A stretch of 56,685 nucleotides of DNA from Macrostomum lignano (lineage: Eukaryota): positions 1 through 56,685 of the forward strand of contig NIVC01001577.1 in NCBI GenBank assembly GCA_002269645.1, given 5' to 3'. The notes under the pieces are model-generated. The model ran no database searches. It was not told the origin of the DNA and was given only the letters and a program-made list of their open reading frames with translations. Below are positions 431 to 42,696 of the stretch, piece after piece; position 1 is the stretch's first letter, and every line of letters begins with the position of its first letter. The translations under genes and the position numbers were made by a program.

Positions 431-1859
431 TCACATTTTATCCCGCGTCTCGGCCAATCCGCCAACAGACAGAATAGGCGGCAGTCGTCGCGGCTGCACC
501 GTCGCTTCGCCGGCAGCAGCGTCGGTTGTCGTTGTCGCCGCCGCAGACGCGTCGTCGCTACTCTGGCATCGATACTTCAAATAGAGCGCGCGAGCGTCGG
601 GCAGCTTAGCTTTGGAAGAGGAAGACGATTGAGCAGCGGCGTCGCTAGCCGGCTTGTCATTGGCGGCCTTGGCATTGTCACTAGTATCATTTGAGACAGT
701 GGCAGCACTACTAATAGTAGCATTCGAAACGGCAGGTTTGGCTTCGGTAGCCGTGGCGGTGGCGGTGGCGGCCGTGGCGGCGGTGGCTGCCCGCTTCATC
801 TGGGCCATCTGGGCGGCGGCGACCAGCTGATTGACGGACGGCATGCCGACGATCGGCCGCCTTCTTTTTTCTTCAGCAGGCGCGCGGGCGGCAGCAGGCG
901 GTACATCTGGGCGCAGTCTTTGCGGGGCCGGCGCGGCCGCTTGATTGGCTGCTCGATCTCTACGTAGCCGTCTTCGTCTTCATCGTCGTCTTCGTCTTCG
1001 TCGACGTCGACGTCGACAATGTCGCCGCGTTGTCGGCGAAGTTCGCGCAAGCTGGTGGCGTCTGAGGCCGCCAGTTGCTGACCGTCTGCGGCCTTTAGGA
1101 TGATTGGTGGAAGACGAGTGAGCTAGATGTATCGCTAGATTAGTCTCTAGATGTATCGCTAGATTAGTCTCTAGATGTATCGCTAGATTAGTCTCTAGAT
1201 GTATCGCTAGATTAGTCTCTAGATGTATCGCTAGATTTGTCTCTAGATGTATCGCTAGATTTGTCTCTAGATGTATTGCTAGATTTGTCTCTAGATATAT
1301 CGCTAGATCAGTCTCTAGATGTATCGCTAGATTAGTCTCTAGATATATCGCTAGATCAGTCTCTAGATGTATCGCTAGATTAGTCTCTAGATGTATTGCT
1401 AGATTTGTCTCTAGATATATCGCTAGATCAGTCTCTAGATGTATCGCTAGATTAGTCTCTAGATATATCGCTAGATCAGTCTCCAGTTGTATCGCTAGAT
1501 TAGTCTCCAGTTGTATCGCTAGATTAGTCTCTAGATGTATCGCTAGATTAGTCTCTAGACGTATCGCTAGATTTGTCTCTAGATGTATCATTAGATTTGT
1601 CTCTAGATGTATTGCTAGATTTGTCTCTAGATGTATCGCTAGGTTTGTCTCTAGATGTACCGCTAGATTTGTTTTTAGATGTCTTTAGCAGCTCACCTGA
1701 TCCCCAAGAATGTGCACCAGTCGTTTCATTTTCGCGGCCAGAAACGGGTAGAGATGCGCTGACGGCAGCAAGTCCTGCTTACGGCAGCGCTGGCGCTGCT
1801 TGCTCTTGTCCTCATCTGCCTCATCGAAGGTTTCCGACTTAATCGCAGGCTGCTGCTGT

Positions 1860-1891
<32 letters not shown>

Positions 1892-3529
1892 CAGCGGCTG
1901 GGACTCCGAAGGCGAAGGCTGCTTCAAAGTCGGCGGCCCTTTGACAGGCGTCACGTGACCTTTGAAACTGTTCACATTGGGGTGATACTGCATTCTCTGC
2001 TGCTGCTGCTGCTGCTGGATATCAGAGACGCTGGCGAGTTCGTCATCGCAGTTGCTACTGACATTGTCGTCCATTTTGACCATAGCGGAGCTGTGAGCTA
2101 GAAGAGCATTGGTGCCTAACACGCTACTGTAACTGGAGCCTTGCTGCTGCTGCTGTTGCAGGGGCAGCGGCGACTTGGCTTCGCGTCTCATTCCACCGCC
2201 GCCAGTTTTGTACATGGTGCCGGTGGCGCTGAACATTTGCACCTGAGCGTAGGGATGGTAGGGGGTCTTCTTGAGCGCCTGCAGCATGCCAGCCCTGGCC
2301 ATGGGGTCGATGGTCCACAGGGAGCCTTTGGCCGAAGTCTGTGGGCGAATTTATCATTATTATATTATATTCTTAATCCAAAAAATCCCCAAGACAGTAC
2401 TCGTATGTGAAATCCAAAAAATCCCCAAAAAATGAAATATAAAATCCTAAAAATTCACATTATACAATATGAAATAATACAAATCCCGAAAATCCCCAAT
2501 ACAGAATATAAAATCCCAAAAGTCCCCAATGCGCAGAATATATAATCCAAAAAATCCCTATAATACAAACAATATGAAATCCCAAAATCCCCAATGAACT
2601 CAATATGAAATCCCAAAAATTTCCTATATACAGAATATGAAATTTAAAAAATTCCCAATACACAATATGAAATTCCAAAATCCCCAATACAGAATATGAA
2701 ATCCCAAAAATCCTCAATACACAGAATATGAAATCCCAAAAATCTCCAATACACAAAATATGAAATCCCAAAAATCGTCAATAAACAGAATATGAAATCC
2801 AAAAAATCCCTAACGAACAGGATATGAAATCCCAAAAATCTGCAATACACAGAATATGAAATCCCAAAAATCCCCAATACAGAATATGAATTATGAAATC
2901 TAAAAAAAAATCCCCAATACACAGAATATGAAATCCCAAAAATCCCCAATACAGAATATGAATTATGGTATCCCGAAAATCCCCAATACACAGAATTTGA
3001 AATCCCAAAAATCCCTAATACAGAGTATGAATTCCACAAAGATCGCAAATAAAGACTGACATTCAAAAGACCCACAGTGCATGCAACAAAATGAAAGAAT
3101 GAGTACACAATACACTACTTACATCCCGCTGCACTTTCGTAAAGCTCTTATTCAGAGACAAGTTATGTCTGACGGAATTTTTCCAGCCGTTCTGAGCCTG
3201 GCGGTAGAATGGGAACTTCTGCTCAATCCACTGGTAGATGCGGCGCACCGGTAGGCACTTGTTTGGCGCCGCCTCAAGCGCCATGAAGATGAGGCAGGAG
3301 AAAGAATAGGGCGGCTTCAGCAGCCGGTCTTTGTGCGGATCGTAGCCGCTGTGAAACCGGTTGCCGCAGCTGGCGAAGGTGGACTGGGGAAACGGTTCCT
3401 GGATCCAGAAGGGGAAGAGGGTGAGAAAAAACGGCTTTGAGAACTCGAAATAGTTATGGTTTTAACTACCGATTTGTTGCGTATTCATGAAAATTTCATA
3501 GATAGGTACGAGAAGATAGATGGATAGAA

Positions 3530-3580
<51 letters not shown>

Positions 3581-3593
3581 TAGACAGACAGAA

Positions 3594-3626
<33 letters not shown>

Positions 3627-3693
3627 CTAAGACAGACAGACAGACAGACAGACAGACACTAAGACAGACAGACAGACAGACAGACAGACACTA

Positions 3694-3748
<55 letters not shown>

Positions 3749-3781
3749 GAGACAGACAGAGAGACAGACAGACAGAGAGAC

Positions 3782-3824
<43 letters not shown>

Positions 3825-4282
3825 GAGACAGACAGAGAGACAGACAGACACTGACAGACAGACAGACAGATAGAACGCACCTTCTTAACACTGGCCGCCC
3901 CGGCAGCCTCAGCGGCAGGCGGCTGGCCAGTCGCATCCGATTCGCCGAGCCCGGGATTCAGCAGATCCGGGGGCCGGTAGTTCACCAGCCAGTCCAAGTC
4001 GCCCAGCTCGCTGCCGCCGCCGCCCACAGACGGCGAGGCTCGCAGGCTGGCGAAGCAGCTGCGGCTCAGCGGGTCGGCAGCTCCGACAGCATCGTCGTCG
4101 ACGTCGTCAAGCGCCGAAGCTCCTGGCGCGTCGCGTAGCGCGTTGGACAGCGCGGCGGCTGGGTAGGAGGCGGCCAGGCTGTCGCTGAGTGCCAAACGCC
4201 TGGCCAGCAGCTCAGCTGAGGAATCGTCGGAATCGGCAGCTGACAAGGGCGGCGGACTGTCGTCGAGCATTAGGCGGCTCAT
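431..4282 (-). CDS. FoxN2/3: forkhead box N2/3-like transcription factor, 4 coding exons (4282-3881, 3398-3123, 2338-1697, 1092-431)
   Basis: Spliced forkhead domain [15 protein letters not shown]...[21 protein letters not shown]|[12 protein letters not shown]...[12 protein letters not shown]; three GT-AG introns all in phase 0. The last exon needs one extra A in the A-run near 866-871 to join the EDEDD and MPSVNQ frames. Confidence 0.92.
1123..1685. repeat. 24-bp (2x12) minisatellite ctagatgtatcg-ctagattagtct filling FoxN intron 3
   Basis: Tandem units visible directly; explains the periodic ORFs at 980-1591. Confidence 0.95.
2370..3035. repeat. about 31-33-bp minisatellite cagaatatgaaatcccaaaaatccccaatac(a) filling FoxN intron 2
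   Basis: Degenerate tandem units visible directly. Confidence 0.9.
3527..3872. repeat. (GACA)n microsatellite in FoxN intron 1
   Basis: Direct reading, with GATA, GAGA and CACTAA interruptions. Confidence 0.97.
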
Positions 4283-4402
4283 TGCTGATGCTGTGGACTT
4301 TGAATTCCTACTGTTGTTTGTCTCAAAGGGTAAAATAGCTTGTACAGATTACTGGAATGGTGAGTAGTAAACAGTGAATCGGTTTTATTAATATGTAAAA
4401 AC

Positions 4403-4545
4403 AGGACTGGGGGGTCACCACACACCCTCAGTTACCCCAGCTAATGCTGGCACCCATTTTACAGCTGGGTGAACTGAAGCAATGCAGAGTTAAATGCCTT
4501 ACTTAAGGACACAAATTGTTCTAAGGCAGTCGAGAATCGAACCAA
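4403..4545 (-). mobile_element. partial, mutated copy of the tRNA-derived SINE at 48556-48798
   Basis: Aligns with the 48601-48750 segment (ggactg..ggtc(g/a)ccacacaccctca..acagct(t)gggtgaactgaagcaatgcagagtt..aaggacacaaa..gagaatcgaacc). Confidence 0.85.
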
Positions 4546-4792
4546 CCACTAGGCTATAGCCTCACCAATCTAGCGCAAATGCAATTTACACTGCTAAGCC
4601 TCTCTGGTGTAATATAACTTGGCCAAAATGTTTAAAATAATTCTATAAAGGCAAAAAATGCTATTTTTGTGAATTTAATAAAAAATAGTGGATTAATACT
4701 AATTATATAAATAAAAATCAACTAAGTTTATATACTAAATGATTACCTAAAACTAAATGTTGCTTTGTTATCTTTTTGTCGCTTATTTATTA

Positions 4793-5048
4793 CTGGGTGT
4801 TGCAAAAAAACTCAACAAAAAATTGTGATAATTCAGCACCAACAAAAAATAAAGGCAAAAATTTAAAGCCAGTTTAACTTTAAATACATATGAAAAGCAA
4901 GCTTAGTTTGTGTGGTCACCATTGATAGCAAGAACTATCTCTCCAGCCTTGTTTGTGCTCTTCAAAATAAAGTCAAATTTTGTAGTATAAGGGGTCATGC
5001 AGACCTTTTAAAGACAAAAAATGTGTAAAGTTTTTTTGCAACACCTGG
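4793..5048. mobile_element. Tc1/mariner-type MITE, 256 bp
   Basis: TIRs ctgggtgttgcaaaaaaact and (reverse complement) ccaggtgttgcaaaaaaact, each flanked by TA. Confidence 0.8.
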
Positions 5049-6486
5049 TATATTTGACAATAAACAAGCAAAAATATTAATAGCAGGCCTAGGCAAGGCT
5101 AAAAGTACTAATAAAATATGATATGCAATCATTTTTACAATAATTTAGTATTTAGTAGGATTATTATATGGGAGATTTCACTTTAGTATTTTTAGTAATT
5201 TACAATTAAATTTTAAATTTTAATAAATACAAAATAGGTTTACGTTTCTAAGAACAGAAGTAACAACATACATAAATAGATGTATTAAGATTAACACGAA
5301 GTTGTTTTAGAATAAATTTGCCTAAAAAGTTATATACCAAGAACCTTAGTATATGCCATGATTATAAGCCAAGTGCATTAAGGACCTTTAATAATGCTAG
5401 AATTTTCTATCACAAAGGCATCTTCTTGACTATAATAATATGGAGACTAGGCCTAATAAGGGATTAGTTTGTTTGTTTAGGTTTGGTCTAAACTAATTTC
5501 TTCTTTACAAGCTAATAGGGATAGCCTCAAGCAAAACTATGGCTTATTCTAATTTTCTATATTCTGTAGCCAAAGAGATTCCAATATTACTATATTCTTA
5601 TAGTTTCTGTAGCCCTAGCCATATTTTTGACAAAAAAGTCTAAGAAATAAAATACTTTGAATCTAGAAGATAACATAGTATTTAAATGACTGCAAATTAA
5701 GATAGAAACTTAGACAAACACTTGATTCGTTTGTAAGATTATTAAATGTCTATCAACTACTACTACTACTACTACAACTATTACTATCAATAGAAGATAA
5801 AGTGAATGTTTTCACATTAATAAAAGTTAGAATTTGCTAGTGTTTTATTGTACCATATTAGATATCATTTATAAGTTTTAAATCTATGATATAGTTTACC
5901 AAGTATCTTTGTTTTACTCAATCTGTTTCTATGTGTACTACAACATGATCCTAACTATAGATCTGCCTTAGGATCCCATAGCCATAGCCATAGCTATGGC
6001 AAAACACTAGTTATTAATAAATTTAATGATTTTGCAAGGTATGCTACCTATGAAATTTTAGAAGAGATAATGATTTGATAGCTTTGGACAAATGTTAGAT
6101 TGTTATCAAGCTGTATTACAAGGGGTGCATAAAAAGTTTTTGCAACCTGGTTCCCAATTGTAGATAAATTGTTGATAAACATTTAAATTCTATATTTTTA
6201 TGAAATCCTTCAATATAATATCTCTATATATTAGCCATATTCTATGCATTTCTAGTAATGGCAAATCTATGCCTCAAAGTTGGCATGGTATTTAGCTCTA
6301 AATTGATATAGTAAGCTGGGTCTTAAGGCTATTGAAAATGACATCTAGTTCAGAAGTTTTGGTAATGCCCAAAAGTTGCAAGGTGCCAAGTTAGGATAAG
6401 GCCTTAGGCCTTAATGGATAGTATAATATCATCTTGAGCTTGTTACTGGCAAAAAAGCTTGTTGTCATGGCCACAGTGTGGCTAGA

Positions 6487-6660
6487 GGCCATACATGCTT
6501 AACCTTGGGAATCACTTGGCCATTTATATTGGCAACATATACATGTAAGTCACTTTTGGCTGAGAGTAGTCATGTGACTACCATTCTGTCCAATAGCAAC
6601 TTACATGTATATGTTGCCAATATAAATGTCTGGTAAAATCCCTAGGTTACACTTAAGCAT
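6487..6660. mobile_element. 174-bp largely palindromic insertion inside the mariner remnant
   Basis: Flanked by GCTAGA direct repeats (6481-6486, 6661-6666); contains a perfect 30-bp inverted repeat (6521-6550 / 6599-6628). Confidence 0.7.
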
Positions 6661-6994
6661 GCTAGAAGCATTGTTATAGTGCAAGTAAATTTTACCACTG
6701 GAAGCAAGTTGGCTGCTCTTCCATCACTAAAGCCACAACTTTAGGCAAAACCTTGCCAGCTAGTATAAAATCTGGCATTGACATTCTGTCCAATTGGCAT
6801 CATAACAATTGTCCCTGGCCCATTGATGCTAAAAAAGACAATAAATATCTGTTTCTATGAGCCAAGTGCCAAGGTAAGTCACAAAATACAAAACTTGATA
6901 AACAAGAAATTGAGAGAAGAAAGGAAAGAGAAAAAGAGAAAAGAAAAAGAAAGGAGAGAGAAAAAAGCAAGAAAAATCATATACAAAGTGAAAA

Positions 6995-7250
6995 TTAAGT
7001 TGCAATTGGGAGAAATTAAGTTGCAATCAAGAGGAACTAAGTTGCAAATCTGGACAAAACTAGGCCCTCCTAAGTTGCACCAGATAGGCCTAGGTGAAAT
7101 CTTGAGGTTGGGCATAGATGAAGCAATTTATAATATTTTAAAGTTGTAATTGGGGGAACTAAGTTGCAATCAGGAGGAACTAAGTTGCAATTGGAAGGAA
7201 CTAAGTTGCAATTGAGAGGAACTATAGGCCTAAGTCGTAATTGGACATCA
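6995..7250. repeat. about 21-bp degenerate tandem repeat ggaactaagttgcaatt
   Basis: Two short clusters of units visible directly. Confidence 0.8.
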
Positions 7251-8816
7251 ATCAATGTGTGAAATTTTGAGGTTTGGGCATATATGCTGGCACTGATCAA
7301 TTCAATCCAATGGGCAATAGTGCAGCATGAAGAGGCTTGATCTCCTATAACTTGAACTAGCTTGGCATGAATTTTTGTGGCATTTTCTTTCTCTAAGTAT
7401 ACCACTTTAGCTAGGACTAGGTTTTTAAATTTGGTAGAGTAAGATTATTTTATTAAAAAAAATTTGCTTTGCCATTGAATTAGGCTAGGTTGGCTCATTA
7501 GGCTGGTAGGCCCTATCTATGCTATATGCTATAATAAACATTATAATATAATCTATATGTCTAATGTCTTGTTTGAATCAAAACCAAGACAGAGTAGGCC
7601 TAGAATGATGCCACTTTGATTTCTTTTAATAAAAAATTAAATTGTGCCTACAATGAAGTAGTGGTATAGGTCTATTAATTTATATAGTACCAAAAGCCTG
7701 GTAACAAGGTCAAGCTGCCTAGCCAATTCAGTTGATTGGCTAGCAGATGATGCATGTACTCCCAGCTCTTTAGACTTTTACTTTTGTTAACTTTCCATTT
7801 TTATATTTCTAAGCAAATAAAATTACAAAAGCTAGGGCCTACACCTTTGCTAAGTCTTAGACTTAGAAGTGCCGGGGTTAGGGTAGAGGCGTAGCGTAGC
7901 GTAGGGTTTAATGTCATTGTGATTTAAGCAAATTAATTTTAACTAGGCCTATTCTAATCCGAAGTCTGAACTTACAGAATTTGATTCAAACGTTTCGAAT
8001 GAAATTTTGCTATGCACATAAATATATTAATGCATTTAGTTACAGATGCTAAAATTCAAAAATAAGGAGCAAATTTCTGCCAAAGCTAGCTCATCATAAC
8101 CAGCAGTCAGCAAACCAATAAAGCTTTAAGGTCTGGTCTTTCACGAGTCCCAAGCTGCTGCGTCGTTAACAACAAATATCGAAAAACTGTTCAAAGTACG
8201 ACAAATTGAAATAACAAAATGTGTTTTTAAAAATGCTCCTAAGAGTGCAAACACTTTGAAGGCGTTAAAAAGAAACATAAAATAATTATAATTAAAATAA
8301 CAGGTCATATTTATTACTGCTCATAAAACGTAAGAACTTAACTCGGTTACACCGGGCCCGTGCCATAAAATTAAGGCGATCGGAGCTTGGCTCAAGAATT
8401 GTCTTTACGTTTTAATTAAGGTGTTGATGGATTTGTATTCATATATTTTATGGTTAAGATCGGGGAGCTAAATGTATATTTGGGAGTTGTTCCAAGGATT
8501 GCAGCTAATCATATTTATCATGTCAGCTAACAGTCTAAAGGTACATGTACATGTATATAGTGAGCGAAAGTTCAAAGGAGGCCAAAGCAAAAGCAGAGAG
8601 TTTCAAAAGAAGGTCCATGTGTACTATCTAGTTTTCTCTCGTAGCCAATTTTGAAACATTCATTACTCTTTCGAAATAGTACATTCTTCCTGCCATGGCT
8701 ACATATAGCCATTCGATCAGTTGTTGTTTACATGATCATCCCTTCTCTCCAAATAATTTTACCAGTACACTTTACATATCTTAATTTCACGGCGGCCCAC
8801 GGGCGACGCTGAAGAC

Positions 8817-9620
8817 ATGATTGAGCGCCTTCTAGATGAGCAGCAACAGGCTGCTGTCGACGACGCTGCATTTATGTCTGGTCCATTATCCAGCTGCAGC
8901 CGACGTGAAGAGCCGCGCAGTGTGGACGACCGTTCCCACTGGAAAATACCGCTCCCAGCTGAGGAGGACTTCTGCACCCAAGCCCAGTCACCACGGAAGA
9001 CATTGCTTTTCGCTCGGAAAACACCGGCCAGGCGGTAAGGCGTTCGGCCCCGACGAAGTCCCGTTGGTCGAAGCGCTGCGGCTCCGATGTGTGGCCTCCC
9101 AGGCGCCATGAACCGCGTGCTTGCTGGCGCCCGTGCGCCTACCGAATGGACCATTGCGCAAACCGTGTCGATTCAACGCGGGAACAATGCGGTCAAAGAA
9201 AAAAGAAGCCTGGGCGGTATTCCATTCGATCCGGGCCGTCCTCCAGTCCGAAAAGCTGCCCAACCGCCAGAGGGCTCTGTTGTGGCAGGCGGTGGTCAAA
9301 ACCGTCTTGCTCTACAACGCCGAGACGTGGACGCTGGCGGCTACGCTTGAGCGACAGTTGGATTCGACGCACTCAGGGCTGCGCCGTGCGTTCTTTCAAG
9401 CTGACGAGAGCGCCAGGACCGAAGCCCTGTACGATCGGGCCAAGCTGCAGCGCCCATCCTGTACTGGTGGTGACTTCAACTGGCGGGTCACGTGATCCGG
9501 GCCGAGAGCTACTGCCCCAAACCTGTTCAGGACGACCTTGCAGGGCCCATTCAGGTGAGTCAGGCCCGAACACGTCGATACGTTGACTGCCCGCTGTGCG
9601 ACGCTGGGGCGTAAAATTAA
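8817..9620 (+). mobile_element. non-LTR retrotransposon (RTE-like LINE) ORF2 remnant lacking the RT core
   Basis: GKAFGPDEVP linker motif joined directly to the C-terminal VKTVLLYNAETWTL...LD...LRR and QLAGHVIRAESYCP motifs, with frameshifts. Confidence 0.75.
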
Positions 9621-10199: not shown

Positions 10200-10796
10200 A
10201 TGGATGTCCTGAAATGCGTCGTTGTCGGCGACTCAAACGTTGGCAAGACCAGCCTGATTATGACGTACGTACAGAGCGCATTCTACGAAAATTCAATACC
10301 GACAGTGTTTGACTCTCACATAGTCACGGTTAACCATGGTGAAGCCAACAAAAGCAGGCAGCTGGTTGTGTGCGACACCGCAGGCCAGGAGACCTACGAC
10401 AGACTGCGACCGCTCAGTTATCCGGACACCCACGTCTTCCTGTTGTGCTTCTCCGTGAACAACTCGACAAGCTTGAGCAACGTAATAGAGAAATGGCACT
10501 GGGAGCTGAAGCATCACTCTCCCAACACGCCAATCATTCTTGTTGGAACCAAGTCAGATTTGCGAGCGTCTGCTCCAACTGACAAAGCAGTTTCTAGCGA
10601 GCGAGGCTGCCAGGTGGCTAGAGAAATCAAAGCCATAAAGTACATAGAGTGCTCTGCGCGACATCAGGACGGACTGCATCGCCTCTTTGTTGAGGCCATC
10701 GCTGCGGCTGATATGCCCCGAGGCGACAACGGTCGTGCTGATGGTGGCAACAGGAACTCTCTGAATGGTTTGAAGACTCTCTGCAGCGTTTTGTGA
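10200..10796 (+). CDS. intronless atypical Rho/Rac-family small GTPase, 198 aa
   Basis: G1 GDSNVGKTS, effector loop [27 protein letters not shown]4 TKSD, G5 ECSA, CAAX CSVL; single uninterrupted ORF from ATG 10200. Confidence 0.92.
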   Translation: MDVLKCVVVGDSNVGKTSLIMTYVQSAFYENSIPTVFDSHIVTVNHGEANKSRQLVVCDTAGQETYDRLRPLSYPDTHVFLLCFSVNNSTSLSNVIEKWHWELKHHSPNTPIILVGTKSDLRASAPTDKAVSSERGCQVAREIKAIKYIECSARHQDGLHRLFVEAIAAADMPRGDNGRADGGNRNSLNGLKTLCSVL

Positions 10797-11620: not shown

Positions 11621-14107
11621 GACCTGATTTTGTTGCTGACGATGTGATGAGAAGTCGCATTCTGATAGAGTTTGTTACACTTCATCCTGTCACATTCAGC
11701 TCGTTCGTCAACCATGCATGTACATACGTATATTTGGTAGCTAGGCGACTACAGGTAGACCAACATCTATTGATCATCGTCAGTGTTACATGAGCTAAAT
11801 GAATTTAGAATTTTCAACTTCTTATGCATTGCAATTACGAAAACCCAAGGCTGCTATGAAATGACTTATTAATTGCTTCTTTGGTGATGTCACCACGATG
11901 TGAAATCTCTTTTTCGAGATTGAAAAATCTCTTGAAATCGAAATTTCACAACGTTGATATTTTACAAAATCGAAAGGCATACAGCGAGATTCAAACTGTC
12001 AATCAAATTAGCTCGTAAATCTGAGATAATTAGATAGTTTACCTAGATAATGGAATGTACGAGTATAATTAATAGCTACGGGCTGGACGACTTGGATTAA
12101 ATATCTAGATGAGGGTGGATAAGATTCGTCGTGAAAGCTACCGCGAGTAGTAGTTCAATATATTGCAACAAGAAGTTCAACTTCAGTAGGGAAATTCCTT
12201 AATGCTTTGTCGCGTACGCTTAGCGCTGAAGCTCAAATGCTAAATATAGAAATATGAGTAGAGTCCCTTCAGAGGCAACCTCACCTAAGACATTCGACAG
12301 AAAAATAATGTATATATGTCGTAATTGCAAGCAGATTTCTTTAGCTAGAAGCACTACTTTGTCTTCTTGGCAATGCTTGCATTGTTTATAATAACTGCTG
12401 TTTCCCGAAAAGATCTTGGTTAAATTCATACAAAAAGCCTTATTTGTCATCAAACGGTTGGAATTCCGAGCCGACTTTTGGAGCATCGATCGAAATACTC
12501 TCCGTGAGTATCATCACTATCAGCATTTTTATTGCAACTTGTTGACTCGCTGAAGACTACTTAAAGTAAGTTATCGCGCATTTTACAACAGTATGTCTAA
12601 TTGTCAACTTAGCGTGGGAGCTTTACAAGCGACAAGTTTCAATACTGTATTAAACATTTCTAATTTCATTAAGCGATGTCTAATGATAAACTTGCTTATA
12701 GAATCTAAATTGCAACTGCGTAAACAATACACAGTGTTGATTTTTAGCTCTTTAACTAATATGAGTAGAGATTTAGAGCCTGCTCAAAACAGAAAAAAGT
12801 ATACGCTTTTTTAGGCAGTGACGTCATCTAGCTTTGACCAGCCCACTAAAAATGCAGTGCCTTGCTTTCGCATAAGCTCGTATCTAAACTGTACGGCATC
12901 ACAAGATGTACAGTGTTAGAGTTACGAGTCTCGGTTTCTATTTTAAAGTAGAGTTGACAAGTATTACAGCATATTCACTGCTTTTGGTTGGCTTTGGTAT
13001 CTCTATTTTGATTATCATTGCATATTATAAAGTCTCAGCTGTTAAGTATTGAATTGGCTAGATAACAGCTCAGCGAAGCCACCTCTATTTTTGTTTCAAG
13101 TAGCTAACTTAATGATATTGCGTGTTTTACAGGTACTGTATAATTTTTTCTGCGTAGAACTCTCCCGCAAATACATGCAGTGTAATACTGTACATGTACA
13201 AATCTCTCTACTGACCAGCTAGTCTTGTTAAACAGTAGGTTCTTGACGTGAACTAACGCTATTTTTCATTTTGCAACAAACCAACTTGTGTCCGCGTCCA
13301 ATGTAGAATTTACATCGAATTCAAAAGTTTGTTGCACATTATGACCAAACCATGTACACTAGTCTAAGTAGCATCACGTGACCCCCCAATATAAGAATCT
13401 CGCTGTTCGCGCTGGCTGCTTCAGCAATTAACTGTCACGGCATGCACATTCTGCAACCCTTTACTCTTTTAAACTTCACCCCCCCCCTACAACCCCGCCA
13501 GCCCACAGGGACAGAGCCCGGAAAAGAGCGCAACGGCGGAAAGACAGACGACATACACACCATGCCCGAGGTCCGCGGTCCTGGCGGGGTTGGGGGCTGG
13601 GCGGGTGTCGGAAACGAGAGAGAGGGGTGCAATTAGCAAGACCGAAATGCAAGGCCAGAGAGTGCTGGAGAGAGGTTGCACAGCGGCAAACTGCAATAGA
13701 GAATGCAATGATTTGGTCTCTAGGCTGGAGAGTGGAGACGGACCCAAGCGCCTTGTGACGTGCGTGCGCGCACTAAAAAGGGGGCTAGAAAACTGCAGAT
13801 AGAAGACAGCAACCCCTTCACCCATAGCTCAATTTAGGCAAGAGGTTGGCCGCCGCCTTTGCTTGATCGAATTGCACTGCAGCACGGTGTTGTTGAATCA
13901 ATGGCTAATTTTGGTCGCCAACCCTCCCCCCCCCTTCGAAACCCAAGGCAATATAGTGTGCTTTCCATGTATATAAAATGGAGACGAAATGGAAAAAGCC
14001 TTCAATAATATTGCGAAAATATCTGCCTCTCTCTCTCCGGTGCCGCGTATTCGGTTTTACTTCTGAGCATTTAATTTGCTAAAGTAAAGTTATAGGCATA
14101 TAGCTGA

Positions 14108-14803
<696 letters not shown>

Positions 14804-16339: not shown

Positions 16340-16379
<40 letters not shown>

Positions 16380-16380
16380 G

Positions 16381-16464
<84 letters not shown>

Positions 16465-16499
16465 GCCAGATAGACAGACAGACAGACAGACAGGCAGGC

Positions 16500-16563
<64 letters not shown>

Positions 16564-16611
16564 GGACGGACAGACAGCCAGATAGACAGACAGACAGACA
16601 GACAGGCAGGC

Positions 16612-16642
<31 letters not shown>

Positions 16643-16689
16643 TAGACAGACAGACAGACAGATAGACAGACAGACACTAAGACAGACAG
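16340..16689. repeat. (GACA)n microsatellite
   Basis: Direct reading. Confidence 0.97.
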
Positions 16690-34687: not shown

Positions 34688-37231
34688 CTCCTGGGGCCCA
34701 ATTGTTGTGAGCAATTCAAGCGACAAGTTAAAATAAATAAAGACCATCGATGCACAGAAGATTGATGTTTTTGTGGAGGAGTGGTGGCCTTCTTTCTAAG
34801 TTATTGCTACCAATGCGTTTTATTGTTTAATCCAAATAGAAGTGTGAAATAGACGTGTAAGGTGATAAAAAAACTGTTTTAACGGTAGAACTATTAAGGG
34901 TGATTGTCCAGCAGTTGTAGTTTGTAGCAGTAGAAGCTTGATAAGAAAAATCTGACATAGTTGCAACAGGATGATAGTCGCCTGGGTGTCATCTGTGAAA
35001 AATTTATACAGCGTCGGGGTGACGACTGAATGCTCAAGAGACCACCTAAGGATGTCCGGCAGTTGAGGTTTGCCCACTGCCAAGGCTTGATCAGCGAAAC
35101 TAGAGAAATTCGCATCAGGGTGTCCAATGTCACCTAGTGCCACCTGTTGAAAGTCCAGAAGCTCCGCCTGGGTGCAAGCCAGTGATCAACGAAGGCAGAG
35201 CTGATGCAGACACATGCGGTCGACGCGCTGATGAACTTTGGAGGCTCGGCAAATTTGTACCTCAAGGCGCAGTGCTGATTGGCGCATAGGGGTACTGAAT
35301 ACACTGGTGCTTATGGAAAAAAATCCGACCTTCTGGCAGCATCGTTAAAGTATGGAGGGCTGGCCACTTTGATTCTTGTTTGAGAAGGTGCGCAAAAAAG
35401 ATAGCCCCTTGGTATGGAATAGTTTGGCTTGGTATAGAATAGATGTAATAGAGTGGAATAGATGACAAGCGCATACTCAGCAGTCTAGTCTAATTATGAA
35501 AATAAATTGAAATAACACATAATCAGAATATACTCAAACCTTTTATGTGATCATTTATTTTAGTGTCAGTAGACACTTTCTAGTCTATCTGCTAGTTTTA
35601 ACAGTCTATAGCTTGAATTAATGCCTGGAATTAGCTAGGATGGCTAGGCCAGTTTTCACTGCTCACTGTCACTGCTCAATGAATCATTAAACTGTTTCAA
35701 GTGATTTGGGCTTGCATGCAAATTCTAGCATTGTGTTTTTTGCATTGCCAGGGTTGCATCAGCCAAAATGCACTTTGGTGGTCCTAGGTCCCTGAGACAG
35801 TTTTAAATTTTACCCCCTATACACCTGATCTTATAATTTTTCATAGCTCTATAGTAAAAAATTAACCTAAATGTACTCACATGTACCTATCATGGTAGAT
35901 AGTTAATAATGTCCATGGAAGAATAATTATAAAATATTTTTTTTCTAATGGCCAAGACCCAAAGTTGGGTCTTATTCTAAATGAGCCAGAGCATGCTTTT
36001 TTCCATTGATGACTTAGATATAGGATTATAGTCTAGTAAGTCTTATCAAAGTAGAAAACTAATTATTTAACATAAAAAGAATATGGTTTGCACATGTTAT
36101 TTTGCTAAAATGATAATGGTAATTATGATATAGTCTATTATTGGTAAGAATCTAAACTTATTAAAGTTTTTTTAAAGCAACACATCAATAAAGTAAAAAT
36201 AAAGTGAAAATTGTGATAAATCGAAGGCTAGTTTTGGTAGATTAAAAATTATTAGGTAATAATATTGCAAGTAAGTAGTTAGTTTAAATGTATACCTTTG
36301 AAAACTCAATCTTTTCTTTAGCCTATATCTTTCTAGCAATCTACTAATGCTTACCCTACTTGTAGAGTAGTAAAATGCCTACTTTTACACATTAAACAAG
36401 AATTTAGCATGCAATGAAGAATTTCTAGGCGATTTTTGCAAATCATAAGCAAGGTTCTATCTATTTTTTTGCAAAATCTGCCAAAATATAGGCTATAGCT
36501 AATTGAAACAATTTATAGATGTAATGTGTAATATAATATATTGTATTCTACAGCTTTAAAATTTTTATTTGCATAAAATTTGACACCTTTATTATAGATA
36601 TAGCATTCTTATTGACTACAACAAGAGATAATAAGAATGCCACAAAATAATTACTGTCATAAACAGGCCCAATTTTAAATATTTGCACAAAATAAATTAA
36701 ACTAACAATCTGTTAATAGCTAAAAAAGCAACATAAGAAAGAAGAAATAAATACCTAAATGAGTTCTATTGAAATTTTAACTGCAAGCAGGTCTGCTTCA
36801 GAAATTCAGAATGACAAGAAGTCAGAAGAGTGGGGTAATAATTATAACTGTCTGTAGTATCCCCATCCCTTGTCGCGTGATGCAAGACTTAAGTCTATCC
36901 AGACCTTATGATTTGTCTATGACCTTGTGTATGAGCTGATCGGCTTTAATCGACTTTAATCCAATAAGCTTGTGCGGAATGAACTTCACATTGTAGTATG
37001 TTTATAGAAACAGTTGATTAAAATAGTTACTGCGCGAAAATTATTATCAGTTTGAAAAGTTGTTCGATAACAATATAAGCTAAACTCTAAAAACATGTTA
37101 TAATATTAAGAAAGGATAAAAAATGCTAAATCTTGCAGCTCAGTGTGTATATTTTATAGTAAGAATTAATAAGAGCATTGGTAAAAGCGTTTTGTTTAAT
37201 TGATTGTTTATTCATGGGCCGCTCGCGGTCT

Positions 37232-37939: not shown

Positions 37940-38894
37940 ATTGCCTGCAAAGGCATCGGTGACTTGGCGATGTGTTTATATTAAAAAAAGGCTTATTTAT
38001 TATTATTTTTTGGATATTGAGTGGCCAAACTGCCACAGTCACAACTAAATTAAACATGATGGACAAGAAATATTAAAAGCAATTTTTTAAAGGAAATTAA
38101 AGCATCAGATAGCGATGCCGATAGGGCCTAGCTTATAGCCTAGCCTAGCCTAGGCCTATCATGTCCTATGCTATAGGCCTATGACTCAATACTTTAAAAG
38201 TCGGACTCAGAATCCTGAACCATAAGCCTAGCCATAGCTACGAGTCCATGACAGGTCGATCTGATTTTAGACGCATTACTATAGTATTATTATAGGCCTA
38301 CTAATATTGTATAGGCAATTGACCTAAGTCCCTTCTCGTATTGCAGAATTTGCAGGCTTAAAGCCCTATTCTGTATTCTATTTTTAGTTTTAAGTTAATA
38401 GACCTCTATTAAAATTAAATCTGTGCCCTCTACTCTAGGCATCTGAAGCCTAGGCCTAATCTATATATATTATATATACTATCTATCTAAGCCAAGGCCT
38501 TAGCCTAATTTAAACTGATAGTGATATGATATAATAGGCCTATAGAAAAGTATTTAGGCTAGGCTTGGCCTAGGCCTAATTCTAGACTTTAGAGTCTAGA
38601 CTTTAGAGTCTAGACTTTAGAATCTAGACTTTAGAGTCTAGACCTTGCATTTATTAGTTTGATTTTTTTATTTAGGCACAAGGCTTAGGCCCTAGCCTAG
38701 CCTTGGCCTAGCCCTGACAATTCTGGCTAAAGCTTGCTACCAGTGCCTGACCTATAATACATATATACGCAACCTCCAAAATTCAGTCAGCTGTGTAACT
38801 TAGTTATTAATGAAAAATGCAATTATAGTTTTTACTTTTTAGCCAAAAATACAATTTATATATAAAGCAAAATTAATGTAACTTTTGGTAGGCC

Positions 38895-38962
38895 TAAATG
38901 GCAGGAGTAACTATGACTGTCTTATTAGGCCCTAAGCCAAAATACCTCATTATCTACTTAGT
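38895..38962 (+). other. decayed 68-nt fragment of 28S rRNA spanning the R2 / I-PpoI target region
   Basis: taaatggcaggagtaactatgactgtctta[ttaggcccta]agccaaaatacctcattatctacttagt versus conserved 28S TAAACGGCGGGAGTAACTATGACTCTCTTAAGGTAGCCAAATGCCTCGTCATCTAATTAGT (reference recalled from established knowledge). Confidence 0.8.
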
Positions 38963-39082
38963 ACTACTTAAGACTTAGGTATTTATTTGGTTGGGCATTT
39001 TTGAAACTTACCTTGGTTGGCTACCAAATTGGTCAGCCCGATTGGCCAACTTAGTTGATTGTTACATATATATGCTATAATA

Positions 39083-39756
39083 CAGGAGTTGGCAACCTTT
39101 TTCCACTTGATTGCCAAATAAGATTTTTAGTTTAAGACCATGGCCGCAGGTTGTCCTCAATTACTTCAACCCTCCTCCCCCTTGGGTCTTCCTTTACCCT
39201 CTAGAATCCATCCCCCTAGTTTTTTAACCTCGAGAATTGGCCCCCCTGGGTCTTTAGGCTACCCTCTAGTATCTGCCCCACTGGGTCTTTACCCTCCAAA
39301 ATCTGCCCCTTGGGTATTTATTCTCTAGAATCCACCCTTGGGTCTTTACCCTCTAGAATCTGCCCCTAGGTCTTTACTAAATTATTACATTTGTATTCCC
39401 ATTGTTGGCCTGCCACCTGCTACCACCTCACTTTCCTTTGCCACCAGTTCCCCTATTTCTTTTCTATTCAGAAGTTTGAACTGATGTGTTGTCTGTCTTC
39501 TAGAGTTTGTAAATAGCCACTTACATAATCAGTTCGTATCTGATTACTATTTACTAATTTGTCATTAATGTTGGCAATTGAGGAAAAAAATTCCCCATTT
39601 TAGTACACAAAACTTTTGTGGGAAAAACAATGAAGTTAGGCCTATAATAAAGGTGCAGGCTAGATTATAATAATTAGGATTAAGGAAATTTGTGGGCTGC
39701 ATAAAAAGTCTTCATTGGCTGGATCTGGCCCACAGGCTAGAGGTTGCCCACCCCTG
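39083..39756. mobile_element. non-autonomous hAT element, 674 bp, with internal tandem repeats
   Basis: TIRs caggagttggcaacct and (reverse complement) caggggtgggcaacct; 8-bp TSD ctataata / ctaaaata. Confidence 0.8.
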
Positions 39757-40756
39757 CTAAAATACAATGTCTATAAAATAGGTAGGCCCTAGCTATTGTT
39801 TTTTTAATTAAAATTAGGTCTATACTTAGATTTTAATAGAGCCTAATCTAATATAAGAAGATTAGAATATAAAAATTAATTCTAGCCTCTAAGCCTAGCC
39901 TGGTAAAGAACTTGAATTGAGCTAGGCTTAGGCCCTACATATTGACTAGGCCTAGGCCCAATTGAAAATAATTTATTAACTTTTTTGCTAAAATTGTTTA
40001 TATAATAAAATAAGCTTAACATTTTATTATACATGTGTTTAAGGTATAAAGCCAAATTAAAAGGCCAATCTAGTTAGTTGGCAAGGTGCGCAGCTAAAAA
40101 AGATCACAAAAATGTTTATCTACAAAAGACACATGTAGTACCTTTTAGATTAAAAAGCATTCAGCCTTAATATTATAGTCAGATAGTATTCTTGCTATTT
40201 ATCTAAAATGATATTTTTGCTAGTAAGTCACCTTTTGGTCAAAAAATAAGTTGCATAGCCAGTATAAATTGGGGGGGGTGCATATATATATCGGATATAT
40301 TATATTAGAGCTTTGTAGACAAAACTAGATTAAATATATGTAGAAAGTTGTGAGCATATAATAATTTACCTTTTCATATTCAATTTTGATCAATAGTCTA
40401 GTTCTAAAAAAAACTAGCAAAGTCAATTTAGACAATTCCAACTAGGGTAACACTTATAAAAATCAATAAAAACAAATCCCAGTTCAAAACAGACAAAGCC
40501 ATTTCAATTCAAACATAGGCTTTTTGTCTATGGTTAAAGCTTGCTTTGGTGACAAAATGAAGAACATCAATAGAACCAGATATCAATTCAAAGAAACAGA
40601 TAAAAGAATTCCAACAGGATTTTTGTTTATGGCAAAACCCTATGGGGGGAGATAGAGAAGAAAATCAATAAAGACAAAATGCTATTCAAAAAGAAGACAC
40701 AAACACTTCAATAAAAACTGACACAACTGTCTATGGTTGAATCTTTATATATATTA

Positions 40757-42100
40757 GCAAATTCCTTGAGGGTTAAACACAGAATCCAATGCAACCCCTG
40801 CCACTTCATGTGGCCTCTATCTACCACATCAGATGCAGATAGTGCATAGTGCAGTGCCGACACTATGACAAAGACAATGCACAAGAATCAGTTGCTGCAA
40901 GCTGGTATCTTACTTAATGATATTAAGTTGGCTCATAAAAACAAAGATCATCTTTGCAAATAAGACTTTTCAAATGGATACCAAGATCATTATATTGCTA
41001 AGGAGATTGTCGCAGATGTTGTGGATGCTAGTTAAGCATTCATTGGAAACCAAGTTGCGACTCATAATATATATAGTCTGAATTGTCTGAATTGACTTTC
41101 CCCCAGATTTTTTAGAACTGGATTTGATAAAAATTGAATGTGAAAAGATGAAGTAGCCTTATATTTTATACACAAAAACTAAAGTCAGCAGGAGCACTTG
41201 ACTCAATTCTCCTATTATTAATAGCCATTTATAATCACATAGAGCCAATGCCAAAAAGCCTTTAAGTCTTGGTGACAAAGGCTTTGGAAATTTCTATCTA
41301 ATTGTTTGTAGATAGCCAACAGCAGCTGCCAATTTTATTATAGCTAGACTTTACAAGGCAGTGGCATTTTTACTTGTCTCCAAGTGTGCCCATATGCCAT
41401 AATCAAATAGATCAGCATCTAGGCTATTGGGTGGCTAAAAAGGCATGCTCGCCTCTTTGAAGATAAGGAAGTTGGTCTTTCTGGCCATGTATGCAGGTGC
41501 ATTTTCTTATTAATGTATGAAGTTGCCATCTGGGAACTTGGCCTGCAGCTATAGCAAAATTTTCTCCCACTGCCCCTCATGCAGGCATTATTAGCATCTA
41601 TATTTCTATCAAGGAACACAATTGGCACCTTCTTGCCATTGCTAGTATTGATAAAAACATAATGCTATGGCCTGTGGGCATTCTTGGTTTCCAATGAATG
41701 CTTACTAGCATCCACAACATCTGTGACAATCTCCTTAGCAATATTATGATATTGGTATCCATTTTAAAAATCTTGTCTGCAAAGATGATCTTTGTTTTTA
41801 TGAGCCAACTTAATATCATTAAGTAAGATACCAGCTTGCAGCAACTGATTCTTGTGCATTGTCTTTGTCATAGTGCCAGCATTGCACTATGCACTATCTG
41901 CATCTGATGTGGTAGATAGAGGCCACATGAAGTGGCAGGGGTTGCATTGGATTCTATGTTTAACCCTCGAGGAATTTGCCAAATTGACTTCCTTTAATGC
42001 TGGCTATCCTTGTGGACCCCACTTCCTTCACTCCACTGTTGTGAGCAACTTGGAGATGCTATGCAGCCTAATTGCAGCAAATGCAAATGGCAACAAAAAT
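40757..42100 (+). mobile_element. probable hAT transposase remnant with a 298-bp inverted duplication (40757-41054 / 41683-41979)
   Basis: Inverted arms align directly; plus-strand reading near 41840-42020 gives LILVHCLCHS and a later CWLSL (ancestral RWLS-like), in different frames. Confidence 0.55.
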
Positions 42101-42696
42101 GAAATGTCACACACTTCAGGCTGTTAGTTATTTTTAATTTCTCTAAAAACTCTGTTGCACCTTAAATGCTGTTAGGCTGTAGCTAGAAAGTATTCTCAAA
42201 TACAATGATATGTTATTTATAATGCTAAAACTGTCGATCTAACTATGTCATATATACTAAACTAAAAGAACTTTATGATTTGTTAGAAAGACTAGTTAAT
42301 GACAATTTATCTATAAAGAATGTAATAAGCACTTAAGCTTTAAAACCTTATGACAATAGTTATACTGAAAGACATTAGACAAGTTATATTTTTATTAAAT
42401 TGTTTACTAGAATCTTGTAAACAGTGATTCTAGGTAAAAAGGGTGCTAAATCAAAAGTTAAAGTGCCAATTGTCATTAAAAAATGAACATTTGTTTTTAT
42501 CTCACAATTGCTTTTATTTTTTAAGTATTATTTGTGTAATATTTAGTAGCCTATATAGTTGTTTGAATTTTGTGTTCCCACAGTACTCTACTCATAGTAG
42601 CAATCAACCCGCGCACTGGTCGCATTGCAGCAGCCGGTAACCGCCCACCAGCCGGCCGCCAACGTGCAGCAGCTGACGCAGTTGGACATTGTGCCA

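What the first reader, a model, noticed from the sequence alone, without database searches (positions are those of the whole stretch)
4600..7870. RIP-like C-to-T hypermutation of a transposon block, beyond CpG
Seen: I find only five CG dinucleotides by eye in about 3.3 kb (4780, 5243, 5297, 5728, 7236), TA is conspicuous, and CG resumes abruptly at about 7872; equally AT-rich DNA at 11.9-13.4 kb keeps many CGs. The embedded mariner gives direction: LHHDNA now reads TTG CAC TAT AAC AAT GCT (H to Y is CpA to TpA; D to N), and PDLAPCDFW reads CCT AAC TTG GCA CCT TGC AAC TTT TGG (both Asp now Asn; the first needs a TpG to TpA hit). The 4403 SINE copy has ttacttaagg where the 48.7 kb copy has ttgctcaagg. 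The two MITE TIRs show CCGG to CTGG and CCAG. Established: this pattern is the hallmark of fungal repeat-induced point mutation, whereas animal methylation decay is mostly CpG. Inference: a regional, repeat-targeted methylation/deamination process acts on TE clusters here and spares exons. I know of no description in such an animal, but could not search.
Basis: partly seen in the sequence, partly recalled or inferred. Interest (0 to 1): 0.85.

Follow-up and report, generated by a model that had tools for sequence, protein, structure and literature searches.

The report
CpG desert over old transposon relics

Summary
CpG o/e is 0.06, against 0.93 in equally AT-rich DNA nearby. It is one of three non-tandem CpG deserts on this contig; the others are 35471-36874 and 38338-42610. 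The contig is NIVC01001577.1 of Macrostomum lignano, a flatworm reported to keep DNMT1 and DNMT3.

The RIP-like reading is not supported:
- The composite RIP index is negative (-0.30).
- CpA/TpG is not depleted.
- All NCG contexts are depleted 7-25x, whereas CAA, CAT, CAC, CTN and CCN contexts are unshifted.
- A 99.5%-identical duplicate of the block on a second contig differs by 8 transitions and 9 transversions.

The best explanation is long-term germline CpG methylation confined to old, silent transposon-relic DNA, with 5mC deamination. Exons, young transposons and satellites are spared.

One feature remains unexplained. The deserts also show a roughly 2x CAG/CTG-to-TAG/CAA shift and strong GGCC/TAGGCC/CTAG enrichment. 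This could be a CWG-context component or just motif-rich repeats.

Methylation itself was not measured. The finding is a modest new example of a known process.

The parts
4575..7873 (.). CpG desert D1, the finding: GC 0.318, 5 CG, CpG o/e 0.06. It is intergenic, between a forkhead-domain gene (minus strand, CDS start near 4282-4348) and an intronless Rho-like GTPase gene (10200-10796).
   Evidence: The duplicate contig also carries it.
4793..5048 (.). 256-bp mariner-type MITE with 19-nt terminal inverted repeats and flanking TA. The TIR starts read CTGG and CCAG, a TG/CA discordant pair that points to an ancestral CCGG.
   Evidence: (0.01 matches expected by chance).
6192..7405 (-). Probable ancient, internally rearranged mariner-like transposase relic. 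It has an HTH region near 7300-7405, an LHYNNA motif at 6667-6684 and a PNLAPCNFW motif at 6369-6395. Stops and frameshifts are numerous.
   Evidence: Pfam HTH_48 is the top hit but below threshold (E 0.011, 16.3 bits against a 24.1 cut-off). No hit in the 5.8-billion-protein search.
6500..6649 (.). Hairpin MITE (60-nt arms, 30-nt loop) nested in the mariner relic between the second and third catalytic-motif remnants. The arms carry a CA (6551-6552) versus TG (rc of 6597-6598) discordant pair.
6913..7224 (.). Purine-rich microsatellite (6913-6976) and two patches of a 21-bp minisatellite (6992-7047, 7141-7224) inside the mariner relic.
4403..4545 (+). SINE-like repeat copy abutting the desert on its left, just outside it. 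It is 86% identical to the copy at 48602-48747 and keeps CG at 4531 and 4538.
35471..36874 (.). CpG desert D2 (GC 0.30, 2 CG, o/e 0.06), with the same dinucleotide signature as D1.
38338..42610 (.). CpG desert D3 (GC 0.35, 13 CG, o/e 0.10). It ends 15 bp before the ORF of the second Rac paralogue. The 38.1-39.96 kb part is rich in TAGGCC/CTAG motifs.
40754..41982 (.). Element with 300-bp terminal inverted repeats (40754-41054 and 41683-41982, 95.3% identical) and a faint Tc1/mariner-like DDE remnant between them. CpG o/e is 0.11 and TpG/CpA o/e is 1.43, the textbook CpG-decay signature.

Best explanation
D1 is an old intergenic graveyard of DNA-transposon relics in Macrostomum lignano. It holds a mariner-like relic with a nested hairpin MITE and minisatellites, plus a mariner-type MITE.

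**Shown**
- It is a sharply bounded CpG desert and one of three on the contig.
- The depletion is specific to CpG (7-25x in every NCG context).
- It pre-dates the duplication that produced the sister contig.
- Within D1, both inverted-repeat elements carry TG-versus-CA discordant pairs. So CpG to TpG and CpG to CpA happened independently in the two arms after they formed.

**Inferred**
- The cause is long-term germline 5-methylcytosine at CpG, laid down and maintained by the DNMT3 and DNMT1 that M. lignano is reported to retain.
- This methylation is confined to silent, transposon-relic chromatin.
- Spontaneous deamination of 5mC gives T:G mismatches that are fixed as TpG or CpA. Ordinary neutral decay then erodes much of the TpG/CpA excess in the oldest parts.
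- Exons, promoter-proximal DNA, satellites and young transposons on the same contig are not methylated in the germ line, or not for long enough, and keep CpG.
- A methylated compartment that has already lost its CpGs would also account for the 'low' global methylation reported for this species.
For: - CpG count and o/e.
- NCG/control frequency ratios are 0.04-0.14, while non-CpG C contexts lie within 0.76-1.95 in both directions.
- CHH contexts are unshifted after masking.
- TpG/CpA o/e is 1.43 in the youngest desert element (40751-42250) and 1.19 in 5991-7870.
- TG/CA discordant pairs occur in the arms of both inverted-repeat elements of D1.
- All 3 CpG left in the 300-bp TIRs of the D3 element face TG or CA in the other arm.
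- 2 of the 5 surviving CpG in D1 differ in the sister contig, against 15 of about 3290 other sites.
- The same block sits in the same gene context on a second contig.
- The organism is M. lignano Mlig_3_7. Reviews state it keeps DNMT1 and DNMT3 and has low-level 5mC (PMC11292947; PMC9246332; PMC10658182).
- Exons, the LTR element and the 47-kb mariner fragment keep CpG.
Against: - No methylation data were available; Wasik et al. 2015 could not be read.
- Pooled over the deserts, TpG/CpA o/e equals the controls (1.12 against 1.11). The expected reciprocal gain is visible only in the younger parts.
- An o/e of 0.06 is, as far as I know, lower than in typical methylated invertebrate gene bodies or bulk vertebrate DNA.
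- The D3 element with 95%-identical TIRs has no shared CpG and no TG/CA discordant pairs. It was therefore already CpG-poor when its arms last were identical, which means inherited rather than in-situ depletion.
- The deserts carry extra features that CpG decay does not predict. These are a roughly 2x CAG/CTG deficit relative to TAG and CAA, GGCC at 43 observed against 6.6-17.7 expected, and a TAGGCC(TA) motif.
- Age and targeting cannot be separated with one contig.
Confidence: 0.6

Rival explanations
1. Inherited CpG poverty. The desert is a patchwork of insertions from transposon families whose source copies were already CpG-poor. They could have been methylated elsewhere for a long time, or been horizontally acquired from a CpG-methylating host. 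On this view no regional process acts at this locus.
For: - The D3 element with 300-bp TIRs was CpG-poor before its arms diverged: 0 shared CpG and no TG/CA discordant pairs, where about 4 would be expected from in-situ decay of about 10 CpG.
- Desert edges coincide with changes of sequence type, for example the SINE on the left of D1.
- All desert sub-blocks share a dinucleotide signature distinct from the controls: CC/GG 1.0-1.6 against 0.6-1.0, and AC/GT 0.71-0.98 against 0.87-1.04.
Against: - Both inverted-repeat elements in D1 show post-formation CpG decay in each arm.
- D1 is a nested composite of at least three element types plus satellites and spacer, all equally CG-free. That is easier to explain regionally.
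- Even this rival needs CpG methylation of transposons somewhere in the lineage.
Confidence: 0.15
2. Dual-context decay. In addition to CpG, cytosines in CWG (CAG/CTG, both strands) were methylated and deaminated in these blocks. The cause would be strong non-CpG activity of DNMT3 or an unrecognised CHG-type methyltransferase. The products would be TAG/CTA and CAA/TTG, with motifs such as CTAG, CCTAGG, CTATAG, CAATTG and TAGGCCTA.
For: - CAG/(CAG+TAG) is 0.27 in deserts against 0.47 in controls (segment-level Mann-Whitney p 0.003).
- CAG/(CAG+CAA) is 0.26 against 0.40 (p 0.011).
- Both hold after masking GGCC motifs and tandem arrays, and none of 11 CHH-type comparisons shifts.
- The shift is seen with 5' A, C or T.
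- Reciprocal hexamers: CTGCAG+CAGCTG number 3 against 15, and CTATAG+CAATTG number 18 against 3 (Fisher p 2e-5, post hoc).
Against: - The gain in TAG (+1.16% of trinucleotides) exceeds the loss of CAG (-0.41%).
- The signal may come from a TAGGCC/CTAG-rich repeat family. That motif also occurs just outside the deserts, next to CpGs.
- The youngest desert element (40751-42250) shows no shift (0.45-0.46).
- Converting TAG/CTA back to CAG/CTG revealed no hidden homology.
- C in CWG is not hypermutable among minisatellite units: 1.5% transitions against 3.6% for other C.
- Only about 9 kb of desert was sampled, and several contexts were tested.
Confidence: 0.12
3. RIP-like repeat-induced hypermutation. 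A homology-triggered deaminase mutates C to T in repeats in several dinucleotide contexts, notably CpA to TpA.
For: - TpA o/e is slightly higher than in controls (0.97 against 0.89), and ACA/(ACA+ATA) is lower (0.32 against 0.45).
- There are single CpA-to-TpA differences in the SINE and at a few polymorphic sites.
Against: - The composite RIP index is -0.30 to -0.38 and the substrate index is 1.35-1.44.
- CpA/TpG o/e is unchanged.
- CAA, CAT and CAC contexts are unshifted.
- The block has no second copy of at least 400 bp in the window.
- The one known duplicate, 99.5% identical over 3.3 kb, differs by 8 transitions and 9 transversions.
- Young repeats are untouched.
- RIP's CpA bias and its requirement for at least 400 bp at 80% identity or more are taken from PMC3017866.
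Confidence: 0.04
4. AID/APOBEC-type editing of transposon DNA or cDNA.
For: None specific. It was considered only because it is the known animal route to clustered C-to-T or G-to-A changes in mobile elements.
Against: - There is no strand asymmetry: GC skew is 0.07, 0.00 and -0.05, and AT skew is 0.04 or less in absolute value.
- TCN and CCN contexts are not depleted.
- The relics are DNA transposons, with no cDNA stage.
Confidence: 0.02
5. Assembly chimera or contaminant DNA.
For: The composition differs from the flanks.
Against: Two contigs of the assembly carry the block between the same forkhead and Rho genes, with 17 substitutions and independent indels elsewhere.
Confidence: 0.01

Closest known systems
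Methylation-driven CpG depletion (5mC deamination) in the methylated compartment of a mosaic animal methylome, and in bulk vertebrate DNA and transposons
   Same: - The loss is specific to CpG.
- TpG/CpA products are seen where the sequence is young enough.
- Homologous arms show TG/CA discordant pairs.
- Boundaries with CpG-normal DNA are sharp.
- The host is reported to have DNMT1 and DNMT3.
   Different: - In most invertebrates the depleted compartment is the gene body (stated in PMC11292947). Here exons keep CpG and the depleted compartment is intergenic transposon relics.
- The depletion is more extreme (o/e 0.06).
- Methylation was not measured.
Repeat-induced point mutation (RIP) of Neurospora and other ascomycetes
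   Same: AT-rich, degraded transposon blocks next to normal genes, produced by C-to-T transitions.
   Different: - There is no CpA-to-TpA dominance and the RIP indices are negative.
- There is no dependence on duplication, because a near-identical duplicate is unmutated.
- Young repeats are spared.
- No RID-type enzyme is known in animals (my knowledge).
CpG-targeted hypermutation of transposons in basidiomycetes (Horns et al. 2012, PMC3318451; found but not read beyond the abstract)
   Same: A transposon-associated C-to-T bias centred on CpG rather than CpA (from my memory of that paper).
   Different: That is a fungal system defined from family alignments. Here only composition and a few paired arms could be examined.
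Plant CG plus CHG transposon methylation (MET1 plus CMT3; my knowledge)
   Same: If the CAG/CTG deficit is real, the pair of contexts (CG and CWG, both symmetric) and the restriction to silent transposon DNA would match.
   Different: - Chromomethylases are not known in animals.
- The CWG signal here is about 2x against 15-25x for CpG, and it may be a motif artefact.

Membership tests
RIP (repeat-induced point mutation) | C-to-T transitions with CpA-to-TpA dominance: high TpA/ApT together with low (CpA+TpG)/(ApC+GpT), giving a positive composite index. | tested here: not met
   TpA/ApT is 1.08 and the substrate index is 1.37, so the composite index is -0.30. D2 gives -0.32 and D3 -0.38; controls give -0.09 to -0.34. 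CpA/TpG o/e is 1.12 against 1.11. CAA, CAT and CAC contexts are unshifted.
RIP (repeat-induced point mutation) | Acts on duplicated DNA (at least about 400 bp at 80% identity or more) and mutates both copies (PMC3017866). | tested here: not met
   No second copy of any desert segment lies in the window. The 99.5%-identical copy on NIVC01001338.1 differs by 8 transitions and 9 transversions.
RIP (repeat-induced point mutation) | RID/Masc-type (DNMT4) cytosine methyltransferase homologue in the genome, and premeiotic timing. | not testable with these tools
   Only this contig and 20 kb of a sister contig of the genome could be fetched.
5mC-deamination CpG decay of a germline-methylated domain | Depletion specific to CpG in all flanking contexts. 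| tested here: met
   ACG 0.07, CCG 0.04, GCG 0.08 and TCG 0.14 of control frequency. Other C contexts lie at 0.76-1.95.
5mC-deamination CpG decay of a germline-methylated domain | Reciprocal excess of TpG/CpA. | tested here: inconclusive
   The value is 1.43 in 40751-42250 and 1.19 in 5991-7870. Pooled, it is 1.12 against 1.11 in controls, and 0.80-1.04 in the motif-rich or most AT-rich parts.
5mC-deamination CpG decay of a germline-methylated domain | Independent CpG-to-TpG and CpG-to-CpA changes in homologous copies at the locus (in-situ decay). | tested here: met
   TG/CA discordant pairs occur at 4794-4795 versus 5046-5047, and at 6551-6552 versus 6597-6598. There are three CpG-versus-TpG/CpA differences in the D3 TIRs. 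There are few events, and the D3 element was largely CpG-poor beforehand.
5mC-deamination CpG decay of a germline-methylated domain | Host has maintenance and de novo CpG methyltransferases. | not tested
   Taken from the literature only: M. lignano retains DNMT1 and DNMT3 (PMC11292947, PMC9246332).
5mC-deamination CpG decay of a germline-methylated domain | The domain is actually methylated in the germ line. | not testable with these tools
   No bisulfite or long-read modification data were accessible. A 2022 review calls the genomic pattern unknown in free-living flatworms.
AID/APOBEC editing | Strand-asymmetric C-to-T or G-to-A changes in TC, CC or WRC context. | tested here: not met
   Skews are near zero. 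TCN and CCN contexts are not depleted.
mariner (Tc1/mariner, Transposase_1 / HTH_48) | Significant match to the transposase domains, a DD(34)D motif order, TA target duplication and TIRs. | tested here: inconclusive
   - The relic at 6192-7405 (-) has HTH_48 as its top Pfam hit, but at E 0.011 and below the cut-off. The catalytic part has no Pfam match.
- Motif remnants are in the right order and strand.
- tblastn gives E 0.02, and the protein search found nothing.
- The separate MITE at 4793-5048 does have TIRs and flanking TA.

The most novel reading that the evidence does not exclude
Macrostomum lignano may have a transposon-only methylome rather than the gene-body pattern usual in invertebrates. 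On this reading, silent relic blocks were methylated in two symmetric contexts, CG and CWG. They would leave both a near-complete CpG desert and a roughly 2x CAG/CTG-to-TAG/CAA footprint with CTAG, CTATAG, CAATTG and TAGGCCTA products. That would be a plant-like context pair in an animal.
Probability: 0.12. Interest if true: 0.75.

Novelty: new member of a known kind. Interest (0 to 1): 0.35.

Why it matters
[quoted passage not shown] M. lignano is cited only as having DNMT1, DNMT3 and 'low' 5mC.

Kilobase-scale CpG deserts confined to old transposon relics, next to CpG-normal exons, would be a sequence-only indication of two things. First, germline methylation in this species targets silent transposon DNA rather than gene bodies. 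Second, the methylated compartment has largely run out of CpG, which would explain the low global levels.

This is easily tested with existing data. It would place a regeneration model among the minority of invertebrates with transposon-directed methylation. It is not evidence for a RIP-like genome defence in animals.

Tried and rejected
1. **Other copies of the desert's repeat families, to polarise substitutions by context.**
   - Self-BLAST of the window found none.
   - A protein search with the mariner pseudo-protein found nothing.
   - A search with the better-preserved 47-kb mariner fragment returned only relatives from other organisms at 61% identity or less, the named ones nematodes.
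   - A search with the LTR Gag returned 8 hits on short contigs.
   - An exact look-up of the Gag ORF was not on record.
   - A spliced Rac product was not accepted for look-up.
   - Only one sister locus (L002) was obtained, and it is 99.5% identical, so it carries too few differences for a spectrum.
2. **De-conversion followed by BLAST.** I reverted TAG to CAG, TG/CA to CG, and applied control conversions, then searched the rest of the window. There were no hits under any rule.
3. **Pfam on the mariner relic.** It is sub-threshold.
4. **Substitution spectra among minisatellite units, as a proxy for context-dependent mutation.** CpG is only about 1.5x elevated and CWG is not elevated. These arrays lie outside the deserts, so the result bears only on genome-wide rates.
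5. **Rfam scan of the window.** There were no matches, so the SINE remains unclassified.
6. **Wasik et al. 2015 (the M. lignano bisulfite data).** The paper is not held.
7. **A guess that 8750-9600 is a LINE fragment.** Pfam did not support it, so I dropped the claim.


Full report
**Source and context**

The window is the whole of contig NIVC01001577.1 of assembly GCA_002269645.1. The NIVC00000000 accession is the Mlig_3_7 genome of the free-living flatworm Macrostomum lignano.

The finding lies between a forkhead-domain gene on the minus strand (first coding exon ending near 4282-4348) and an intronless Rho-like GTPase gene at 10200-10796. A second contig of the same assembly, NIVC01001338.1 (L002), carries the same 20 kb with the same genes.

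**The observation**

It is correct in every particular.
- 4600-7870 contains exactly five CG, at 4780, 5243, 5297, 5728 and 7236. GC is 0.317 and CpG o/e is 0.06.
- About 76 CG are expected at the o/e of AT-rich control DNA in the same window, giving Poisson P = 2e-26.
- A likelihood-ratio segmentation gives 4575-7873. CG occurs at 4531, 4538 and 4574 before the desert, and at 7873, 7890, 7895 and 7900 after it.
- AT-rich DNA at 11750-13250 keeps CpG o/e 0.97.
- The same segmentation finds two more non-tandem deserts, 35471-36874 (o/e 0.06) and 38338-42610 (o/e 0.10). It also finds several minisatellites whose repeat units simply lack CG.
- The block is not a chimera. L002 holds it with 17 substitutions and no indels.

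**What the block is made of**

- A 256-bp MITE at 4793-5048, with 19-nt TIRs and flanking TA.
- A hairpin MITE at 6500-6649.
- Micro- and minisatellites at 6913-7224.
- Around these, on the minus strand from about 7405 to 6192, remnants in the right order of a mariner-type transposase: an HTH region, LHYNNA and PNLAPCNFW.

The mariner identification is only probable. Pfam HTH_48 is the top hit but sub-threshold (E 0.011). The catalytic part matches nothing. A 5.8-billion-protein search found nothing.

That degree of decay matters. If only CpG sites (about 3% of positions) had changed, the gene would still be easily recognisable. The relic is therefore old and has accumulated changes of all kinds.

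Young repeats on the same contig keep their CpG:

| Repeat | CpG o/e |
|---|---|
| LTR retrotransposon with an open 1026-codon Pol frame | 1.05 |
| mariner fragment at 47039-47344 (tblastn E 7e-23) | 0.82 |

Exons have o/e 0.65-0.92.

**Is it RIP-like, beyond CpG?**

RIP is defined by a CpA-to-TpA bias in duplicated DNA of at least 400 bp at 80% identity or more (PMC3017866). Six lines of evidence bear on this.

1. RIP indices fail. TpA/ApT is 1.08 and (CpA+TpG)/(ApC+GpT) is 1.37, so the composite index is -0.30. The other two deserts give -0.32 and -0.38. All are at or below the control values.
2. CpA/TpG o/e is 1.12 against 1.11 in controls.
3. By trinucleotide, the four NCG contexts are at 0.04-0.14 of control frequency. 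Every other C context lies within 0.76-1.95, in both directions.
4. After masking GGCC motifs and tandem arrays, C/(C+T) in CAA, CAT, CAC, CTA, CTT, CTC, CCA, CCT and CCC contexts does not differ from controls.
5. There is no strand asymmetry, which also excludes APOBEC-type editing.
6. The only known duplicate of the block, 99.5% identical, differs by 8 transitions and 9 transversions. No homology-triggered transition process has acted since the duplication.

- The MITE TIRs (CTGG versus CCAG) are a TG/CA discordant pair. This is the signature of one ancestral CpG decaying independently in the two arms.
- The hairpin MITE shows the same pattern at 6551-6552 versus 6597-6598.
- Two of the three Asn codons follow a C (CAC-TAT-AAC and TGC-AAC). 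If they were Asp (GAC), the change was CpG to CpA.
- The His-to-Tyr change and the remaining Asn are unpolarised single changes in a very old pseudogene.
- The SINE difference lies outside the desert, and the sister contig still has the C.

**Evidence that the loss is methylation-type CpG decay**

- Besides the discordant pairs, the youngest desert component is an element with 300-bp TIRs that are 95.3% identical (40754-41054 and 41683-41982). It has CpG o/e 0.11 and TpG/CpA o/e 1.43, close to what full conversion of a CpG-normal sequence predicts.
- All three CpG left in its arms face TG or CA in the other arm.
- Two of the five CpG surviving in D1 differ in L002.
- Reviews state that M. lignano retains DNMT1 and DNMT3 and has low-level 5mC, with the genomic pattern unknown.

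**Caveats**

- Pooled over the deserts, TpG/CpA is not raised. I attribute this to age, because the excess mutates onward. That is inference.
- The TIR element has no shared CpG and no discordant pairs. It was therefore CpG-poor before insertion, and some of the depletion is inherited rather than local.
- One contig cannot separate 'old' from 'targeted'. However, the CpG-normal 47-kb mariner fragment, which has no close relative among the proteins returned, argues against age alone.

**An unexplained residue**

All desert sub-blocks except the youngest share features that CpG decay does not predict.

| Feature | Deserts | Controls or expectation |
|---|---|---|
| CC/GG o/e | 1.0-1.6 | 0.6-1.0 |
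| GGCC count | 43 observed | 6.6 (base composition), 17.7 (first-order Markov) |
| Consensus around GGCC | TAGGCC(T/C)(A/T) | - |
| CTAG | 76 observed | 27.4 (base composition), 38.1 (first-order Markov); controls 35 observed vs 39.4 expected |
| CAG/(CAG+TAG) | 0.27 | 0.47 (p 0.003) |
| CAG/(CAG+CAA) | 0.26 | 0.40 (p 0.011) |
| CTGCAG + CAGCTG | 3 | 15 |
| CTATAG + CAATTG | 18 | 3 (Fisher p 2e-5, post hoc) |

This is what deamination of both cytosines of symmetric CWG sites would produce.

Several points weigh against that reading:
- The gain in TAG exceeds the loss of CAG.
- The TAGGCC motif also occurs next to CpGs just outside the deserts.
- De-conversion revealed no hidden homology.
- CWG is not hypermutable among minisatellite units.
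- Only about 9 kb of desert was sampled.

I record it as the most novel reading not excluded, not as a finding.

**Verdict**

The CpG desert is real and statistically overwhelming. Its most likely cause is ordinary CpG methylation and deamination confined to old transposon-relic DNA. The RIP-like, non-CpG interpretation is not supported.

It is a new example of a known process, in a species whose methylation landscape is reportedly uncharted. Interest is therefore moderate. The decisive data would be genome-wide family alignments and methylation calls, and I could not obtain either.

Noticed in passing
window 4195-4557, 5015-5370, 12156-12424 versus L002: Divergence between the two near-identical contigs is patchy. 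There are 10, 15 and 9 substitutions in three patches of 270-360 bp, and almost none over the kilobases between them. This suggests gene conversion between subgenomes or haplotypes, or mosaic consensus in the assembly.
   Followed up: partly
L002, inserted at the position matching window 8137: A 262-bp MITE with GGCCTTTTCATATT... termini is present in the sister contig and absent from the window. This is an insertion polymorphism between the copies, and the MITE contains CpGs.
   Followed up: no
window 38100-39960 and scattered through all three deserts: A TAGGCC(TA) / CTAG / (TAGCC)n-like motif recurs roughly every 200 bp. The tetramer GGCC is 6.5x over the base-composition expectation in deserts but at expectation in control DNA.
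   Followed up: partly
window 52500-56685: An apparently young LTR retrotransposon runs off the contig end. It has a Gag ORF with DUF7041 (52758-53735) and a Pol frame open for 1026 codons, with protease, RT, RNase H and integrase domains. Its CpG o/e is 1.05.
   Followed up: partly
window 47039-47344 (+): A C-terminal mariner transposase fragment with one stop codon. Its best database relatives are about 60% identical (the named ones nematode transposases), and no close relative was returned for M. lignano. Its CpG o/e is 0.82, in contrast with the desert relic.
   Followed up: partly
window 29592-30301 and 43241-43799: A GC-rich (about 0.6) minisatellite family of 28-31-bp units lacks CG entirely and is rich in CTGG/CCAG/GGCC. 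It is present in opposite orientations, the second copy inside the second Rac paralogue.
   Followed up: no
window 969-3874, 16340-33737, 43241-44962: The contig carries an unusually large number of mini- and microsatellite arrays: TRF reports 58 (partly overlapping) rows, among them two (AGAC)n tracts of about 350 bp at 3526-3874 and 16340-16689.
   Followed up: no
window 10200-10796, 14135-14803, 42625-44011: Three Rho/Rac-family GTPase genes lie on one contig. One is an intronless Rho-like gene and two are Rac paralogues with the same exon break.
   Followed up: no
window 4403-4545 and 48602-48747: Two copies of a SINE-like repeat are 86% identical. Neither matches any Rfam family, and their 3' parts differ.
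   Followed up: partly
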